Origin: Octopus bimaculoides
Taxonomy: Eukaryota
NCBI RefSeq assembly: GCF_001194135.2
Contig: NC_068989.1
Location: forward strand, 60,106,720 to 60,145,309
DNA length: 38,590 bases
Direction of reading: 5' to 3'
Positions 993 to 36,255 of this stretch are shown in pieces. Below the pieces are notes generated by a model. It saw only the letters and a list, made by a program, of their open reading frames with translations. It was not told the DNA's origin and made no database searches. The translations under genes were made by a program, and so were the position numbers. Position 1 is the stretch's first letter. Each line of letters starts with the position of its first letter.

Positions 993-1310
993 CCTCCTCC
1001 TCCTCCTCCTCCTCCTCCTNNNNNNNNNNNNNNNNNNNNNNNNNNNNNNNNNNNNNNNNNNNNNNNNNNNNNNNNNNNNNNNNNNNNNNNNNNNNNNNNN
1101 NNNNNNNNNNNNNNNNNNNNNNNNNNNNNNNNNNNNNNNNNNNNNNNNNNNNNNNNNNNNNNNNNNNNNNNNNNNNNNNNNNNNNNNNNNNNNNNNNNNN
1201 NNNNNNNNNNNNNNNNNNNNNNNNNNNNNNNNNNNNNNNNNNNNNNNNNNNNNNNNNNNNNNNNNNNNNNNNNNNNNNNNNNNNNNNNNNCATCATCATT
1301 ATTATTATCA
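993..1310. repeat. (CTC)n microsatellite, assembly gap 1020-1290, then (CAT/TAT)n
   Basis: Seen directly in sequence. Confidence 0.95.
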
Positions 1311-3059: not shown

Positions 3060-3205
3060 AAATGTAAGAAAGTCAGAAAAATTGAGTGTACCAGGCTTAA
3101 ACAAAAGTACTGTGTTCACTTCATTCAACAAAAACTTATTTAAGGTGGTGCTCCAGCATGGTCTCAGTCTAATGACTGAAAGAAGTAAAAAGTAAAGGGT
3201 AAACC
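3060..3205 (+). mobile_element. Degenerate 3' part of SINE family C
   Basis: AAGGTGGTGCTCCAGCATGGTCTCAGTCTAATGACTGAAAGAAGTAAAA matches the reverse complement of 20035-20090 (copy at 20030-20275). Confidence 0.75.
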
Positions 3206-8159: not shown

Positions 8160-8212
8160 NNNNNNNNNNNNNNNNNNNNNNNNNNNNNNNNNNNNNNNNN
8201 NNNNNNNNNNNN

Positions 8213-9953: not shown

Positions 9954-10824
9954 GATGTAAAGAACAGCCGCTTCGATTAGTCGTTTCGAATCCTGCTCGA
10001 GACAAACACTTCAATAACCACTAAATAATCACACACACTATATACTGACACACACTTTATCCATTTTATTTTCGCTACTAACCGTCTTCGCGATCCCTTC
10101 ATATCTACGGTGGGGCCAGAGTTACACGTGGTTGGTGAATTTTTAATAAAAATACGAAGATAGCTCATCAATGCTAAAAACCTTCCTGACCACCATCTTT
10201 GTAATCCTGAAAAATATCGTAACTCTTGGTCTAGCTGTCTGGCCGTGAAGAGTGAACAGACAAAGAGACAGGCAGAGGGACATTCCAACGAGCATAACGC
10301 CCATTATAGTAAGATAGCAAATCTACCCATCTACAATGGGACATAAAAGGATAGTTTCGCAAATCTGAACCTTCTAAATTCACGAACTATACGGGGTGGG
10401 GTTGGGAGAAGAATCCAGAGTTAATTCTCGTCACCGGAATTTTAGCAAAAAAAAAAAAAAAAANNNNNNNNNNNNNNNNNNNNNNNNNNNNNNNNNNNNN
10501 NNNNNNNNNNNNNNNNNNNNNNNNNNNNNNNNNNNNNNNNNNNNNNNNNNNNNNNNNNNNNNNNNNNNNNNNNNNNNNNNNNNNNNNNNNNNNNNNNNNN
10601 NNNNNNNNNNNNNNNNNNNNNNNNNNNNNNNNNNNNNNNNNNNNNNNNNNNNNNNNNNNNNNNNNNNNNNNNNNNNNNNNNNNNNNNNNNNNNNNNNNNN
10701 NNNNNNNNNNNNNNNNNNNNNNNNNNNNNNNNNNNNNNNNNNNNNNNNNNNNNNNNNNNNNNNNNNNNNNNNNNNNNNNNNNNNNNNNNNNNNNNNNNNN
10801 NNNNNNNNNNNNNNNNNNNNNNNN

Positions 10825-19415: not shown

Positions 19416-20029
19416 AAGAACGTTAAAGACATGCTAGGCAGAACAGACGAATATTTAGCCTTCATCAGTTATCTCGCTATGGGTTCTAGCAGTTTCGAAG
19501 TTTAGTGGCATTAAGAAACCTCTGGATACTACTGTCAAAGCACTTTGTTGAAGTAAAAACTTGGCGACTGGATGTTGGAAACAAGGAAATGGAAAGGTTG
19601 TACGGTTAATACTTGTGACTAATACAGAAAAGAAGAACACATATGTCTATCTAAAATGAAATTAAATGAAATAAAACGTTTTTCGACAAAAGAGAAAGCA
19701 AAACTGTAAATTGTGACGAAAATGAAAGGACACAAAACAAATATAATAATGCAACAAGTAGGACACAGAAGGGAAAAGAACCAGGAATGTTGTGTGTGTG
19801 TGTGTGCGAGTTTGTATAGATATTATAGAGTGTTCAATGTGTGACTAGGTTAAGTGGCACAGATTACATTCTGTAAAATGAAAATAAAAGAGGAAAATTC
19901 TTGCTTAACGTGTATCTATCGTTTAAATTTACTGAAAATAACTGAAGACAGACAGTACATGTTTAAGAAAAACGTTTAATTATATATACATGAATATATG
20001 CAAATATGCTGACACCATTGTATATTAAT

Positions 20030-20275
20030 ATCTTTTATCCTTTACTTGTTTCAGTTATTAGACTGCAGCCATGCTGGGGCACCGCCTTGGATTTTTTAGT
20101 CGAATGAATAGTCCCCAGTATTTATGTTTTAAAGCCTGGTACTTATTCCATCGGTCTCTTTTTGCCGAACCGCTAAGTTAAGGGGATGCAAACACACCAA
20201 CACCGGTTGTCAAGAGGCGGTGGTACAAACACAGACGGAGAATCAAACACATACATACATACATACATACATGCC
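20030..20275 (-). mobile_element. SINE family C copy with adjacent (CATA)n
   Basis: Shares a core (GTCGA..CCCCAGT..CTGGTACTTATT..ATCG) with family B; its end matches fragments at 3060-3205 and 28372-28430. Orientation inferred. Confidence 0.8.
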
Positions 20276-20289
20276 TTGTTGAGGACTTT

Positions 20290-21090
20290 TGATTAGTAGA
20301 TGGAGACCATAGAGCATTTGAAAGCTTGAGTACTGGATTGGTCTGGGTTAGCCTAAAATCCTCAAAAATTCAAAGGAGGGTATGAGGTAGAATATATACT
20401 CATCCACATGGCACAAAATGGAATTTTCCTGACAGTACCGGTAATGTAGATCGAAATTTATGACACATCGGGATAAATTAAGTTCCAGAACACAACAGAA
20501 ATACAATGACGTATTATGGTTAGTCTGTGACCATCTTGTAAGTGCTCTCTTCCCAGAGGAAAGGTGATGTAGAGAATAACATCAACTTTTGCACAGATCT
20601 TTACAATTTCCTTCTTGAAAATTTTCCTCGAGTTCACAATCAACATGTAGCTGGACCCTGGATAAGCATTGCCCCGACGTTACATAAAATCCTAGGTCAC
20701 TTCTGGGAACTGACTGAGTTAAACAATTGTGAAGGACTCGGGAAGACAGATGAAAGTGGAATGGAAGGTTGCAATAGAGTTTTAAGGTGATACTTATCGA
20801 GCCTCCAGTTACATGTTGAATTTGGACTCGAGGAAAATGTTCAAGAAGGAAAATGTAAAGATCTCTGCAAAAGTTCTTGTCGTTCTCTACATCACCTTTC
20901 TTCTTGGAGAAAAAGAATTAATTTATCACGGGTAACTTCTCAAGTGAAAAATCTTGCTGATACTCTGAGGAGGACGTGGACTGCTTCTGATCCATTGGTT
21001 CTTGATAAGAAAGTGAAGGCGCTACAATTTTGCAGGCAATGTAATGTTTATGTACACTCAGTTCGTTACCATGAGAAAAAATACAGCTAG
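20290..21090 (+). pseudogene. RAG1/Transib-like DDE transposase pseudogene, C-terminal part
   Basis: TGNVDRNL (cf. RAG1 MNGNFARKL); SIAPTLHKILGHFWELTELNNCEGLGKTDESGMEGCNRVLR (cf. RAG1 [35 protein letters not shown]); after a 123-nt insert, KRINLSRVTSQVKNLADTLRRTWTASDP (cf. [25 protein letters not shown]); then CRQC-x4-H-x4-H. Comparison done by eye from remembered sequence. Confidence 0.78.
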
Positions 21091-21237
21091 TACTGCCGTA
21101 ACATCTGATGATTACTTGTTTAACGAAATTATGCTATAATGTATCAAAGCAAGTTATCATTATGGTAAATCGTGCTTATTCTTCATTTTAATCTAAATTA
21201 TACTCATTTGAAGATTTACGGAGATTTGGGCCCAGAC

Positions 21238-21744
21238 CGAGCTTCAAATGAGTCCACAAATTTTCATAATTGTCTGATCAATATGCTTCCAATGAGCCCT
21301 TAACCACATTCCAATCGTCATTTAATTCAAATTATGTCACTTTTTGTGTTTTGGTCCCGAAATATGCAAATATGAAAATCTGACCCCAGATCACCGATCT
21401 AAAAAAAAAAAAAAAAAAATCACCAGTTCCGTAAATTTCCAAACTTGTGTTATAAATACGTTTACAACGAGGTCTCAACTATCTTCCAATCTTCTTTTTC
21501 ATTCAACCGATGCCCTGTTTTGTATTTTAGCCTAAAATGCTCAAATATGGAAATTCGGTTTCTAGACCGAATTTCTAAAATAGCTTTATCGATACGTTTC
21601 CAATGAACCCTCACCTACATTCCAAGTGTCACTTAACTAAGGTTATGCCAAATTTTGCCCCAAATCCCTAGACTTTTGAGAAATTTTTGTTTTTCATAAA
21701 ATTCCAGAATTTCTTTGCTAATACGCTTTCAACGAGTACTCACT
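21238..21744 (+). repeat. Five dispersed copies of a ~24-bp motif (ATACGyTTyCAAyGAGyyCTCAC); probable transposon subterminal repeats
   Basis: Copies at about 21238, 21281, 21456, 21592 and 21721; hairpin AAATTCGGT-TTCTAG-ACCGAATTT at about 21551-21574. Confidence 0.7.
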
Positions 21745-21759
21745 CGCTATCGGGATATT

Positions 21760-22299
21760 TTCCTGCCAAGCTATGACCAAACGTCAATGAAATCATCTTC
21801 TCAGCCCAATGCATTCTGGAGGTAAGGTGAAGAGCCGAATACTATTGCCACACATATGGCCTATTGACTGGCCATAGTCTTCAGCAGCTTCACGTAGCCG
21901 TCTGTATTGAGGGTAGGGCCTTGTTAAAAGATGTGGAGATGTATTTCGGCGTGAATTCCTAGTCTCTCCTTGTTGGCCACAGCGACGATGTCTCCATTGC
22001 AGCTGTCCGTGTTACATCTTACAACCTTTATAGTGTTCACAGAGCACTGAGTTGCAGTTATGACGTCGGCAATTTAACGCCTGGCGCGAATCGTCATGAT
22101 GCAGCTAACTGTATTTCAATATTCAGATGGCTTCCAGTCTTCCATGTCAGCTAATCTTTTCTCAACTATAAATTTAAACTTCACGCTCTTCAACGTCTAT
22201 AATGTTCACCAATACATCAAGCTGTTCCTGGAAAAGAAGGAAACATAACAAATTGTCAAATATAGTCCGAACGTCTTGTACATCCGAATCTTTACCCTA
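21760..22299 (-). mobile_element. Internally deleted Tc1/mariner transposase relic (possibly DD37D/maT-like)
   Basis: MEDWKPSEY*...IMTIRARR..TATQCSVNTIKVVR...; HIF*QGPTLNTDGYVKLLKT; DSALHLTS (cf. QDSAPAH). Probable 5' end at TA 22298-22299; no matching 3' TIR seen. Confidence 0.7.
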
Positions 22300-28461: not shown

Positions 28462-29158
28462 NNNNNNNNNNNNNNNNNNNNNNNNNNNNNNNNNNNNNNN
28501 NNNNNNNNNNNNNNNNNNNNNNNNNNNNNNNNNNNNNNNNNNNNNNNNNNNNNNNNNNNNNNNNNNNNNNNNNNNNNNNNNNNNNNNNNNNNNNNNNNNN
28601 NNNNNNNNNNNNNNNNNNNNNNNNNNNNNNNNNNNNNNNNNNNNNNNNNNNNNNNNNNNNNNNNNNNNNNNNNNNNNNNNNNNNNNNNNNNNNNNNNNNN
28701 NNNNNNNNNNNNNNNNNNNNNNNNNNNNNNNNNNNNNNNNNNNNNNNNNNNNNNNNNNNNNNNNNNNNNNNNNNNNNNNNNNNNNNNNNNNNNNNNNNNN
28801 NNNNNNNNNNNNNNNNNNNNNNNNNNNNNNNNNNNNNNNNNNNNNNNNNNNNNNNNNNNNNNNNNNNNNNNNNNNNNNNNNNNNNNNNNNNNNNNNNNNN
28901 NNNNNNNNNNNNNNNNNNNNNNNNNNNNNNNNNNNNNNNNNNNNNNNNNNNNNNNNNNNNNNNNNNNNNNNNNNNNNNNNNNNNNNNNNNNNNNNNNNNN
29001 NNNNNNNNNNNNNNNNNNNNNNNNNNNNNNNNNNNNNNNNNNNNNNNNNNNNNNNNNNNNNNNNNNNNNNNNNNNNNNNNNNNNNNNNNNNNNNNNNNNN
29101 NNNNNNNNNNNNNNNNNNNNNNNNNNNNNNNNNNNNATATATATATATATATATATAA
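28431..29158. repeat. (TA)n flanking assembly gap 28462-29136
   Basis: Seen directly; explains the 265-312 aa X-filled ORFs. Confidence 0.97.
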
Positions 29159-30848: not shown

Positions 30849-31080
30849 NNNNNNNNNNNNNNNNNNNNNNNNNNNNNNNNNNNNNNNNNNNNNNNNNNNN
30901 NNNNNNNNNNNNNNNNNNNNNNNNNNNNNNNNNNNNNNNNTTCATCAACTTGCAGACATTGTATCGTGTCAATTTTAGTTGTTTATTTGTTTACTAAAAG
31001 GACAACAATAACAATATACAAACACATGTGACATATTATGTCATATCAGTAATTATAAAAATGACAACCCCTAACTTTCT

Positions 31081-33037: not shown

Positions 33038-33047
33038 NNNNNNNNNN
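32976..33047. repeat. (GA)n microsatellite and short gap
   Basis: Seen directly in sequence. Confidence 0.97.
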
Positions 33048-36167: not shown

Positions 36168-36255
36168 NNNNNNNNNNNNNNNNNNNNNNNNNNNNNNNNN
36201 NNNNNNNNNNNNAAAAAAAAAAAAAAAATAATAATAATAATAAATAAATAAATAG
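36138..36255. repeat. (TA)n, gap 36168-36212, poly-A/(AAT)n
   Basis: Seen directly in sequence. Confidence 0.93.

What the first reader, a model, noticed from the sequence alone, without database searches (positions are those of the whole stretch)
20290..21090. RAG1/Transib-like transposase relic retaining the Zn histidines, catalytic Glu and a CxxC-H tail
Seen: HKILGH, ESGMEGCNRVLR, SR..S......D.LRRTW..S and TGNVDRNL, collinear with the RAG1 core. Known: mouse RAG1 uses H937/H942 (HKTLAH) for Zn and E962 (SEGNESGNK) for catalysis; invertebrate RAG1L proteins carry a C-terminal C-x2-C-x3-GH-x4-C motif. Here CRQC-NVY-VH-SVRY-H has identical spacing. Inference: a decayed copy of a RAG1-like/Transib lineage in a cephalopod, relevant to the origin of V(D)J recombinase. 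Active copies, and possibly a RAG2L partner, may exist elsewhere in the genome; neither a RAG2L nor CAC..TG TIRs are visible here.
Basis: partly seen in the sequence, partly recalled or inferred. Interest (0 to 1): 0.8.

Follow-up and report, generated by a model that had tools for sequence, protein, structure and literature searches.

The report
Dead fragment of a Transib transposon
This is the broken last third of a Transib cut-and-paste transposon, a mobile-element relative of the RAG1 gene that builds antibody diversity. It is an ordinary dead copy of a known kind, not a RAG1-RAG2-type element.

Summary
The reading frame at 20270-21139 scores 140.9 bits against a profile of intact relatives and is 63% identical to a 221-aa metagenome protein.

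A profile of full-length relatives (about 730 aa) hits:
- HzTransib at 2e-63
- amphioxus RAG1L at 1e-47
- vertebrate RAG1 at about 1e-33 across the whole core

A predicted structure matches only RAG1, Transib and RAG1L chains in the PDB.

The window copy is only the last ~36% of the transposase. Both catalytic Asp residues and the ZnC2 cysteines are missing, and the copy carries 10 premature stops, frameshifts, four deletions and a 119-nt inverted self-duplication.

The C-x2-C-x3-GH-x4-C knuckle is truly homologous but decayed: Gly is now Val, and a 2-nt deletion removed the last Cys.

It reads CTCAGCCCAATGCA, against the family's CTCAGCCCACTGTG.

A complete relative is 3.6 kb, starts with CACAGTG, has one ORF, no RAG2L and no N-terminal RING. 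This is therefore a Transib with a CCGHC tail, a combination already described as "Subgroup I" Transibs, and not a RAGL element. The cephalopod host was not verifiable.

The parts
20270..21139 (+). Transposase pseudogene: the C-terminal ~36% (profile positions 473-733 of 733) of a Transib-type transposase, spread over three frames
   Evidence: hmmsearch of the A2 profile against the six-frame translation scores 140.9 bits. tblastn with P0001-P0004 and P0154 hits here.
20270..20344 (+). First homologous stretch, HALLRTFD**METIEHLKA*VLDWS. It is the 5' truncation point and is followed by a frameshift (a 16-nt gap at about 20363).
   Evidence: It aligns to P0002 residues 90-115 and L002 443-523. 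Stops are at 20294-20299 and 20327-20329.
20437..20460 (+). TGNVDRNL, the remnant of the conserved GGTTTxGNxAR motif (RAG1 'NGNFARKL', HzTransib 'DGNTARRF'). A 24-nt deletion just upstream removed GKGGTTTD.
   Evidence: Alignments.
20551..20669 (+). Left arm (the original coding copy) of a 119-nt inverted repeat whose arms are 86% complementary
   Evidence: the repeat finder. This arm is in frame with the relatives.
20683..20700 (+). HKILGH, the two ZnH2 zinc-ligand histidines (equivalents of mouse RAG1 H937 and H942)
   Evidence: These columns (H620 and H625 in P0009 numbering) are invariant in A2. They align to HKLLIH of HzTransib, HKVIEH of BbRAG1L and HKTLAH of RAG1.
20752..20787 (+). ESGMEGCNRVLR, the third catalytic residue in its E-x-x-N-K/R context. 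The catalytic Glu codon is 20764-20766.
   Evidence: E647 and K651 are invariant in A2. The stretch aligns to SEARNK (Hz), NEAGNK (Bb) and NESGNK (RAG1).
20788..20906 (+). Insertion of an inverted copy of 20551-20669 (repeat finder places this arm at 20790-20908). It splits ...NRVLR | RINLSR... and begins with a stop codon.
   Evidence: It is absent from L001 and L002 at this position. It matches L001 4017-4144 on the opposite strand, and gives a minus-strand hit.
20926..20994 (+). SRVTSQVKNLADTLRRTWTASDP, the conserved C-terminal-domain motif (SRK.S....N..D.....W..SDP)
   Evidence: It aligns to HzTransib 'SRKKSRQASNEDILNMLIISSDP'.
21031..21072 (+). Decayed CCGHC zinc knuckle (CTT1/CTT*), reading CRQCNVYVHSVRY-H. 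Gly is now Val, and the last Cys codon was destroyed by a 2-nt deletion at about 21070.
   Evidence: Intact in P0001-P0004 (FCKHCDVYGHSIRYC and similar). The DNA alignment is. zf-CCHC_2 hits 4 of 11 relatives.
21095..21139 (+). True C-terminus, AVTSDDYLFNEIML plus the TAA stop, in the frame reached after the 2-nt deletion
   Evidence: It matches VVTSDDKLFNDLTMKY* of P0001.
21257..21811 (+). Non-coding 3' part of the element: three degenerate copies of a ~130-175-nt subterminal repeat (about 21257-21390, 21433-21558, 21650-21811) with an A19 run at 21401-21419
   Evidence: BLASTN matches to the 3' regions of L002 (78-80%), L001 and L003-L005. TRF did not detect the repeats.
21800..21813 (+). 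3' terminal inverted repeat remnant, CTCAGCCCAATGCA. The family consensus is CTCAGCCCACTGTG, the reverse complement of CACAGTGGGCTGAG. The heptamer CAC is mutated.
   Evidence: In the six-locus alignment all flanks diverge immediately after this 14-mer. The exact 14-mer lies at both ends of L006 and L007 and at the 3' end of L002. The match alone (3 mismatches) is not significant; its position is what counts.

Best explanation
Window 20270-21813 is a dead, 5'-truncated copy (the 3' third) of a Transib-superfamily DNA transposon.

How intact family members look and work:
- They are about 3.6 kb, bounded by 14-bp terminal repeats that begin with the RSS-like heptamer CACAGTG (CACAGTGGGCTGAG).
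- They carry a single ~730-aa transposase. It has the RAG1/Transib architecture: an NBD-like region, an RNase H fold with a DDE triad, a ZnC2/ZnH2 zinc site, a C-terminal domain, and a C-terminal C-x2-C-x3-GH-x4-C zinc knuckle.
- By analogy with HzTransib, BbRAGL and RAG, such a transposase would pair the two ends and cut by nick-then-hairpin at the CAC. It would insert with a 5-bp target duplication, and the knuckle would clamp subterminal TIR DNA. These mechanistic steps are inferred, not shown here.

The window copy can do none of this:
- It lacks the 5' TIR, both catalytic Asp residues and the ZnC2 cysteines.
- Its frame is broken by 10 premature stops, at least two frameshifts, four deletions and a 119-nt inverted self-duplication.
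- Its knuckle has lost Gly and the last Cys.
- Its only TIR has lost the CAC.

It is a neutral fossil. It is not a RAG1L-RAG2L (RAGL) element.
For: Superfamily:
- P0001 (63% identical to the window peptide) hits HzTransib at 1.8e-5. P0002 hits HzTransib at 1.7e-9 and BbRAG1L at 1.2e-5.
- The A2 profile of 11 relatives hits HzTransib at 2.3e-63 (218 bits), BbRAG1L at 1.2e-47 and RAG1 at about 1e-33 across the whole core.
- Pfam RAG1 PF12940 hits 6 of 11 members, best E 6e-16. PF26100 RAG1_RNase_H is precomputed on the relatives.
- The AlphaFold model of P0009 (pLDDT 71) has 49 significant PDB matches. All are RAG1, HzTransib or BbRAG1L (best 3.6e-21); the next is Hermes at 0.034.

The window belongs to this family:
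- 140.9 bits against the profile.
- 76% DNA identity to L001.
- Shared 3' subterminal repeats and a shared terminus.

Transib rather than RAGL:
- The L006/L007 element (3621 bp between perfect 14-bp TIRs) has one ORF of 728 aa and nothing else longer than 102 aa.
- In the window, L001, L002, L003 and L011 the 3' TIR lies 300-1350 bp after the stop, with no ORF longer than 77 aa in between.
- Full-length relatives have no RING-like N-terminus.

Decay: the lesions are listed.
Against: - The window peptide on its own gets no Pfam hit, so the assignment rests on intact relatives.
- A 5-bp target duplication could not be confirmed. The L006 flanks are CTATA and GATAT, and the window lacks a 5' end.
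- My NJ tree is poorly resolved. Family monophyly appears in 19 of 200 bootstraps, and the RAG1+BbRAG1L branch falls inside the wider set of relatives. The family's exact position relative to RAGL is therefore open.
- No copy from the host genome itself could be examined, so a RAG2L-bearing variant elsewhere cannot be formally excluded.
- The nick-hairpin mechanism and DNA binding by the knuckle are inferred from HzTransib and BbRAGL, not tested.
Confidence: 0.92

Rival explanations
1. It is a relic of a RAGL transposon (RAG1L plus RAG2L, ProtoRAG-like), the direct kind of ancestor of the V(D)J recombinase.
For: - The CCGHC tail is the hallmark of the CTT* domain in invertebrate RAG1L (PMC7204232).
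- The family has about 57 profile positions after the ZnC2 CxxC that align to RAG1 and BbRAG1L but are nearly absent from HzTransib (18 residues).
- In the NJ tree the RAG1+BbRAG1L branch nests among the wider relatives.
Against: - The same tail and the same extra ZnB region are described for Subgroup I Transibs (PMC9435367).
- The complete relative L006/L007 has one ORF between its TIRs.
- There is no ORF between the transposase stop and the 3' TIR in the window, L002, L003 or L011.
- The relatives have no RING/ZDD N-terminus and are about 730 aa long.
- HzTransib outscores BbRAG1L in every search.
Confidence: 0.04
2. It is a domesticated or otherwise functional host gene fragment derived from a Transib transposase.
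For: The ZnH2 histidines and the catalytic Glu are still readable, and an 82-codon open stretch exists at 20542-20790.
Against: - There are 10 premature stops, at least two frameshifts, internal deletions of conserved residues and a 119-nt inverted insertion in the middle of the catalytic motif region.
- Two-thirds of the protein is absent.
- The element's own non-coding 3' end and TIR remnant are still attached, as expected for a dead insertion and not for an exapted exon.
Confidence: 0.01
3. The motifs are a chance resemblance, or the fragment belongs to another DDE superfamily such as hAT, P or Sola.
For: Pfam gives no hit for the window peptide itself.
Against: - E=7e-57 to P0001.
- 140.9 bits to the family profile.
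- The family's only structural and sequence matches are RAG1, Transib and RAG1L. Hermes (hAT) appears only at E=0.034.
Confidence: 0.005

Closest known systems
Subgroup I Transib transposons of Tao et al. 2022 (e.g. ctenophore and Hydra Transib-9 types; PMC9435367)
   Same: - One transposase gene and no RAG2L.
- A CTT1 tail with C-x2-C-x3-GH-x4-C.
- An extra ZnB segment after the ZnC2 CxxC that HzTransib lacks.
- An NBD-like N-terminal region that aligns to the RAG1 NBD.
- TIRs that start with the CACAGTG heptamer.
   Different: - Named Subgroup I sequences were not on hand, so clade membership is inferred from characters and not from a tree.
- Beyond the shared 14-mer the two ends differ, but a 12/23-like asymmetry was not demonstrated.
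- The window copy is a dead fragment.
HzTransib (Helicoverpa zea Transib transposase, PDB 6pqn and related entries)
   Same: - It is the best-scoring solved relative (218 bits with the profile).
- Same DDE, ZnC2/ZnH2 and C-terminal-domain motifs (HK.L.H, SE..E..NK, SRK.S...D....SDP).
- Single-ORF element with a CAC-type TIR.
   Different: HzTransib lacks the CCGHC knuckle (it has a different tail, CTT2 according to Tao et al.). It also lacks about 40 residues after the ZnC2 cysteines. Identity is only about 20%.
BbRAG1L of the amphioxus ProtoRAG/RAGL-B transposon (PDB 6b40), and mollusc/nemertean RAG1L (PMC7204232)
   Same: - Same core fold and catalytic and zinc residues.
- The same CCGHC C-terminal tail, which in BbRAG1L clamps TIR DNA.
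- Heptamer-type TIR.
   Different: RAGL elements carry a convergent RAG2L kelch gene, and their RAG1L proteins have N-terminal Cys pairs and a RING/ZDD. Neither is present in this family. The profile score is lower than for HzTransib (166 against 218 bits).
Vertebrate RAG1 core
   Same: The alignment is collinear from the NBD to the C-terminal domain at E of about 1e-33. TM-scores are 0.5-0.66. The family TIR heptamer CACAGTG is identical to the RSS heptamer.
   Different: RAG1 is a domesticated host gene with an acidic tail in place of the knuckle, and it needs RAG2. Identity is about 17%.

Membership tests
RAG1/Transib transposase superfamily | Significant sequence similarity of the transposase core to RAG1, RAG1L or Transib | tested here: met
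   Family profile against the PDB: HzTransib 2.3e-63, BbRAG1L 1.2e-47, RAG1 about 1e-33. Pfam RAG1 hits 6 of 11 members. The window frame scores 140.9 bits against the family profile.
RAG1/Transib transposase superfamily | RAG1-type fold (RNase H catalytic domain plus the zinc-binding and C-terminal domains) | tested here: met
   Tested on the full-length relative P0009. All 49 significant Foldseek hits are RAG1, HzTransib or BbRAG1L, with TM-scores up to 0.67. Not testable on the fragment itself.
RAG1/Transib transposase superfamily | DDE catalytic triad | tested here: met
   In the relatives, D273 (DGSG; nearly invariant, at least 90%), D376 and E647 (both invariant) are conserved in A2. The window keeps only the Glu (codon 20764-20766), because the region encoding both Asp residues is deleted.
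RAG1/Transib transposase superfamily | ZnC2 (CxxC) plus ZnH2 (HxxxxH) zinc site | tested here: met
   C391, C394, H620 and H625 are invariant in A2. The window keeps HKILGH (20683-20700) but lacks the CxxC because of the 5' truncation.
RAG1/Transib transposase superfamily | TIRs beginning with a CAC(A/T)GTG heptamer | tested here: met
   CACAGTGGGCTGAG lies at both ends of L006 and L007, at the 5' ends of L008 and L009, and at the 3' ends of L002, L003, L004 and L011. The window has a 3'-end remnant with 3 mismatches, placed by positional homology.
RAG1/Transib transposase superfamily | 5-bp target site duplication | tested here: inconclusive
   Only L006 shows both flanks, and they differ (CTATA against GATAT). 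The contig may be chimeric. The window has no 5' end.
Intact or autonomous Transib copy | Complete open reading frame and two TIRs | tested here: not met
   The window holds only profile positions 473-733. It has 10 premature stops, frameshifts, deletions and an inverted insertion, and no 5' TIR.
Subgroup I Transib (Tao et al. 2022) | CTT1 tail with C-x2-C-x3-GH-x4-C | tested here: met
   The strict motif is present in 39 of 62 relatives that have a tail, including P0001-P0004, P0009 and P0154. In the window it is decayed to CRQCNVYVHSVRY plus a 2-nt deletion.
Subgroup I Transib (Tao et al. 2022) | ZnB segment equivalent to RAG1 alpha11-alpha12 (lost in Subgroup II, e.g. HzTransib) | tested here: inconclusive
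   Profile positions 414-470 align to RAG1 and BbRAG1L, while HzTransib has only 18 residues there. The AlphaFold model has low confidence at residues 420-469, so helix equivalence is unproven.
Subgroup I Transib (Tao et al. 2022) | Asymmetric TIRs | tested here: inconclusive
   The 5' and 3' ends share only the first 14 nt and then differ. The 3' ends share TGATTTT at about positions 18-25, and the 5' ends have an A-rich block at about positions 29-34. There are too few complete elements to define spacers.
Subgroup I Transib (Tao et al. 2022) | Phylogenetic grouping with named Subgroup I members | not tested
My NJ tree has only three references and is unresolved.
RAGL transposon (RAG1L + RAG2L) | Convergent kelch-repeat RAG2L gene inside the TIRs | tested here: not met
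   - Window 21140-21813 is 674 bp of degenerate repeats.
- The complete L006 element has a single long ORF.
- L011 has no ORF longer than 77 aa between the stop and the TIR.
RAGL transposon (RAG1L + RAG2L) | RAG1L N-terminal Cys pairs and RING/ZDD | tested here: not met
   Eight full-length relatives have 3-7 Cys in the 264-321 residues before DGSG and no RING pattern. The N-terminus of the window copy is deleted.
RAGL transposon (RAG1L + RAG2L) | Placement inside the RAG1L clade | tested here: inconclusive
   NJ on 321 columns: BbRAG1L+RAG1 pair in 128 of 200 bootstraps. The window's subclade (P0002, P0005, P0009, P0154) is separate from that pair, but the deep nodes are unsupported.

The most novel reading that the evidence does not exclude
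The relic samples a large and largely uncatalogued clade of single-ORF, CCGHC-tailed Transibs. That clade has about 1,400 protein clusters at 50% identity in public data, many from open-ocean metagenomes, and some copies are identical across independent samples and therefore probably still active. It may be the Transib lineage closest to the one that captured RAG2L to found the RAGL transposons. If the window's host is a cephalopod, this would also be a first described cephalopod representative.
Probability: 0.2. Interest if true: 0.5.

Novelty: new member of a known kind. Interest (0 to 1): 0.25.

Why it matters
As a single dead fragment it matters little. It adds one more Transib fossil to an invertebrate genome and should be masked as a repeat rather than annotated as a gene.

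Its modest value lies in what it points to. The family combines a Transib gene plan (one ORF, no RAG2L) with two features otherwise associated with RAG1L: the CCGHC DNA-clamp tail and an extra segment in the zinc-binding domain. Its TIR begins with the exact RSS heptamer CACAGTG.

Intact members seen in marine metagenomes could serve as tractable material for testing how the knuckle tail reads subterminal TIR DNA in a RAG2-independent enzyme.

Tried and rejected
- Pfam on the window peptide, with and without the inverted insert, gave no hit at E<=10. The fragment is too short and decayed, so the assignment had to go through relatives.
- The first protein search found a single relative. More came only from searching with that relative (P0001), from the exhaustive representative search and from a profile.
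- Looking for the missing 5' two-thirds elsewhere in the window found nothing on either strand (hmmsearch --max; tblastn).
- A second TIR-like 14-mer at 22038-22051 (CACAGAGCACTGAG on +, 3 mismatches) was rejected as chance. 36 of 100 shuffles give at least 2 such matches, and no homology to any element follows it.
- TRF did not detect the 3' subterminal repeats. They are visible only by BLAST to relatives.
- The target duplication could not be confirmed.
- The first NJ/bootstrap run timed out. The rerun was unresolved at depth, so I do not rest the Transib-versus-RAGL call on it.
- tRNA and Rfam scans, run to type the adjacent SINE-like piece, found nothing.
- Host identity: the sample accessions of the relatives led only to an ocean-metagenome paper. 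The window's organism remains unverified.

Full report
**1. Observation**

Exact coordinates come:
- TGNVDRNL: 20437-20460
- HKILGH: 20683-20700
- ESGMEGCNRVLR: 20752-20787
- SRVTSQVKNLADTLRRTWTASDP: 20926-20994
- CRQCNVYVHSVRYH: 21031-21072

That frame contains stops at 20383, 20461, 20479, 20521, 20539 and 20788. HALLRTFD..HLKA..VLDWS (20270-20344) lies upstream in a second frame. AVTSDDYLFNEIML plus TAA (21095-21139) lies downstream in that second frame again.

**2. The resemblance is not chance**

The peptide finds one protein, P0001 (221 aa, from an ENA metagenome contig), at E=7e-57 and 63% identity in 5.8 billion sequences. Searching with P0001 gave P0002-P0004. An exhaustive phmmer search with P0002 against 1.84 billion cluster representatives gave 1,435 hits at E<=1e-3 and 119 at E<=1e-30. 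Many of these are full-length proteins of 700-790 aa.

A profile of 11 of them (A2) scores the window's frame at 140.9 bits. Apart from the internal inverted duplicate, it finds nothing else in the 38.6-kb window.

**3. What the family is**

Sequence evidence:
- P0001 alone hits HzTransib (PDB 6pqn) at 1.8e-5 and amphioxus RAG1L (6b40) at 0.18.
- P0002 hits HzTransib at 1.7e-9, BbRAG1L at 1.2e-5 and RAG1 at about 0.04.
- The A2 profile hits HzTransib at 2.3e-63 (218 bits), BbRAG1L at 1.2e-47 (166 bits) and about 15 RAG1 chains at 1e-30 to 1e-34. The RAG1 alignments run from the nonamer-binding domain to the C-terminal domain.
- Pfam RAG1 (PF12940) matches 6 of 11 members, best E 6e-16, and zf-CCHC_2 matches the tail of 4.
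- The database's precomputed annotation is PF26100, RAG1_RNase_H.

Fold evidence: an AlphaFold model of the full-length relative P0009 (pLDDT 71, pTM 0.55) has 49 significant Foldseek matches in the PDB. Every one is RAG1, HzTransib or BbRAG1L (best 3.6e-21, TM up to 0.67). The next hit is the hAT transposase Hermes at E=0.034.

Conserved columns in A2:
- the DDE triad: D273 (nearly invariant) in DGSG, D376, and E647 in E-x-x-N-K
- the ZnC2 pair C391 and C394
- the ZnH2 pair H620 and H625
- the C-terminal C696, C699, H704 and C709

TGNVDRNL corresponds to RAG1 NGNFARKL and HzTransib DGNTARRF.

**4. Transib, not RAGL**

Literature retrieved here says the C-x2-C-x3-GH-x4-C motif defines CTT* of invertebrate RAG1L (Martin et al. 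2020, PMC7204232). It also says the same tail (CTT1), together with the alpha11-alpha12 segment of the zinc-binding domain, occurs in 'Subgroup I' Transibs (Tao et al. 2022, PMC9435367; see also PMC10462144). The tail therefore does not discriminate between the two. What defines RAGL is a convergent RAG2L gene inside the TIRs and a Cys-rich RING N-terminus on RAG1L.

I tested both features:
- L006 and L007 carry a complete element of 3,621 bp between perfect 14-bp inverted termini, CACAGTGGGCTGAG...CTCAGCCCACTGTG. It has one 728-aa ORF and nothing else longer than 102 aa.
- The same 14-mer, with at most 2 mismatches, marks the 5' ends of L008 and L009 and the 3' ends of L002, L003, L004 and L011.
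- In every locus the 3' terminus lies 300-1350 bp after the stop codon. L011, with the longest gap, has no ORF above 77 aa in it.
- Eight full-length relatives have no RING-like pattern and only 3-7 cysteines before the DGSG motif.

The family does carry the strict CCGHC motif in 39 of 62 members that reach the tail. It also has about 57 profile positions after the ZnC2 cysteines that align to RAG1 and BbRAG1L but correspond to only 18 residues in HzTransib. That character set matches Tao's Subgroup I.

I could not place the family on a tree with named Subgroup I members. My NJ tree used three references, transcribed from the alignments printed, and is unresolved at depth. Family monophyly appeared in 19 of 200 bootstraps and BbRAG1L+RAG1 in 128 of 200 (the first attempt, timed out).

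**5. Anatomy of the window copy**

The DNA alignment to L002 and L001 and BLAST show that homology starts at about 20268-20272. That point sits directly against a (TACA)n microsatellite and a SINE-like dispersed repeat (20020-20262; a second copy lies at 3088-3189 on the minus strand). About two-thirds of the element is missing, including the 5' TIR, both catalytic Asp residues and the ZnC2 cysteines.

Lesions in what remains:
- stops at 20294-20299 and 20327
- a frameshift at about 20363
- five more stops before 20540
- a 24-nt deletion that removes GKGGTTTD
- 18-nt and 3-nt deletions
- a 119-nt inverted copy of 20551-20669, inserted at 20788-20906 between ...NRVLR and RINLSR... (the arms are 86% complementary)
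- Gly changed to Val in the knuckle
- a 2-nt deletion at about 21070 that removes the last Cys codon and shifts the frame

After the true stop (21137-21139) come three degenerate subterminal repeats shared with L001, L002 and L003-L005. In a six-locus alignment, similarity ends in all sequences immediately after TCTCAGCCCACTG(T/C)G. The window reads CTCAGCCCAATGCA at 21800-21813. The 14-mer match alone would not be significant; it is the register with the other termini that identifies it. The heptamer's CAC is mutated, so the end could not be cut even in trans.

**6. Mechanism**

Shown here:
- the family has the RAG1/Transib sequence, fold, catalytic and zinc residues
- it has RSS-heptamer TIRs and a single gene
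- the window copy is truncated and riddled with inactivating lesions

Inferred from HzTransib, BbRAGL and RAG biochemistry:
- intact members excise by nick-then-hairpin at the CAC and insert with a 5-bp duplication
- the CCGHC knuckle clamps subterminal TIR DNA

The target duplication was not confirmed (the L006 flanks are CTATA and GATAT). The window copy has no function that I can see.

**7. Novelty and score**

Transib is a well-known superfamily, and the CCGHC-tailed subgroup has been described. This is a new (dead) member of a known kind. A mollusc-wide TE survey found only one intact Transib (PMC10294476). I found no paper reporting Transib in cephalopods, and I could not verify the host. 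The window is 35.5% GC, rich in microsatellites and carries N gaps, as expected for a draft eukaryotic assembly.

The most interesting residue is the family itself. It is large, partly still intact in ocean metagenomes (P0159 is identical on four contigs), and intermediate in characters between HzTransib and RAG1L. Interest: 0.25.

Noticed in passing
window 20020-20272: A SINE-like dispersed repeat (20020-20262) followed by a (TACA)n microsatellite abuts the exact 5' truncation point of the Transib fragment. A second, 78%-identical copy of the repeat lies at 3088-3189 on the minus strand. No tRNA or Rfam match was found for it.
   Followed up: partly
window 20551-20669 / 20790-20908: A 119-nt inverted self-duplication (arms 86% complementary, 120 nt apart) places the HKILGH...ESGMEGCNRVLR segment in the loop of a potential foldback. 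It probably arose by template switching or break repair after the copy died. The 14% divergence between the arms shows the event is old.
   Followed up: partly
window 22038-22051: CACAGAGCACTGAG on the + strand resembles the family's 5' TIR 14-mer (3 mismatches) 225 bp beyond the relic's 3' end. No homology to any element follows it, and the shuffles make it compatible with chance.
   Followed up: yes
window 1020-1290, 2831-2932, 8160-8212, 10464-10824, 28462-29136, 30849-30940, 33038-33047, 36168-36212: Eight runs of N (assembly gaps), mostly flanked by microsatellites. The window is 35.5% GC and has no convincing long ORF, so it looks like intergenic or intronic repeat-rich DNA from a draft eukaryotic assembly.
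   Followed up: no
L001 1794-3515: Immediately upstream of the related, also 5'-truncated, copy in L001 there is a 1.7-kb tandem array that reads as (VDDGMRGSS/VDDGMRDNL/VDDGMVNSS)n on the minus strand. It is probably a satellite that replaced the 5' part of that copy.
   Followed up: no
L003, L004, L005 (gene 1158-3347 in L003) and L006/L007: Identical full-length transposases occur on contigs from independent ocean samples: P0159 on 4 contigs including a TARA sample, and P0154 on an ENA contig and a Logan contig. L006/L007 also has perfect TIRs. This suggests young, possibly active elements in some abundant pelagic animal.
   Followed up: partly
L006 248-283, L009 155-190; 3' ends of L002, L006, L001 and window 21744-21813: Beyond the shared 14-mer the two ends differ. 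The 5' ends carry an A-rich block (CCTAAAATC / CCCAAAAAT) about 21-23 nt after the heptamer, reminiscent of an RSS nonamer. The 3' ends share TGATTTT about 11 nt after the heptamer. This may be a 12/23-like asymmetry, but there are too few complete elements to judge.
   Followed up: partly
P0174: One of only two source-named relatives is 'uncharacterized protein LOC126879708' of the beetle Diabrotica virgifera; the other (P0171) is a JGI 'hypothetical protein'. Members of this Transib group are thus being annotated as host genes in insect genomes.
   Followed up: no
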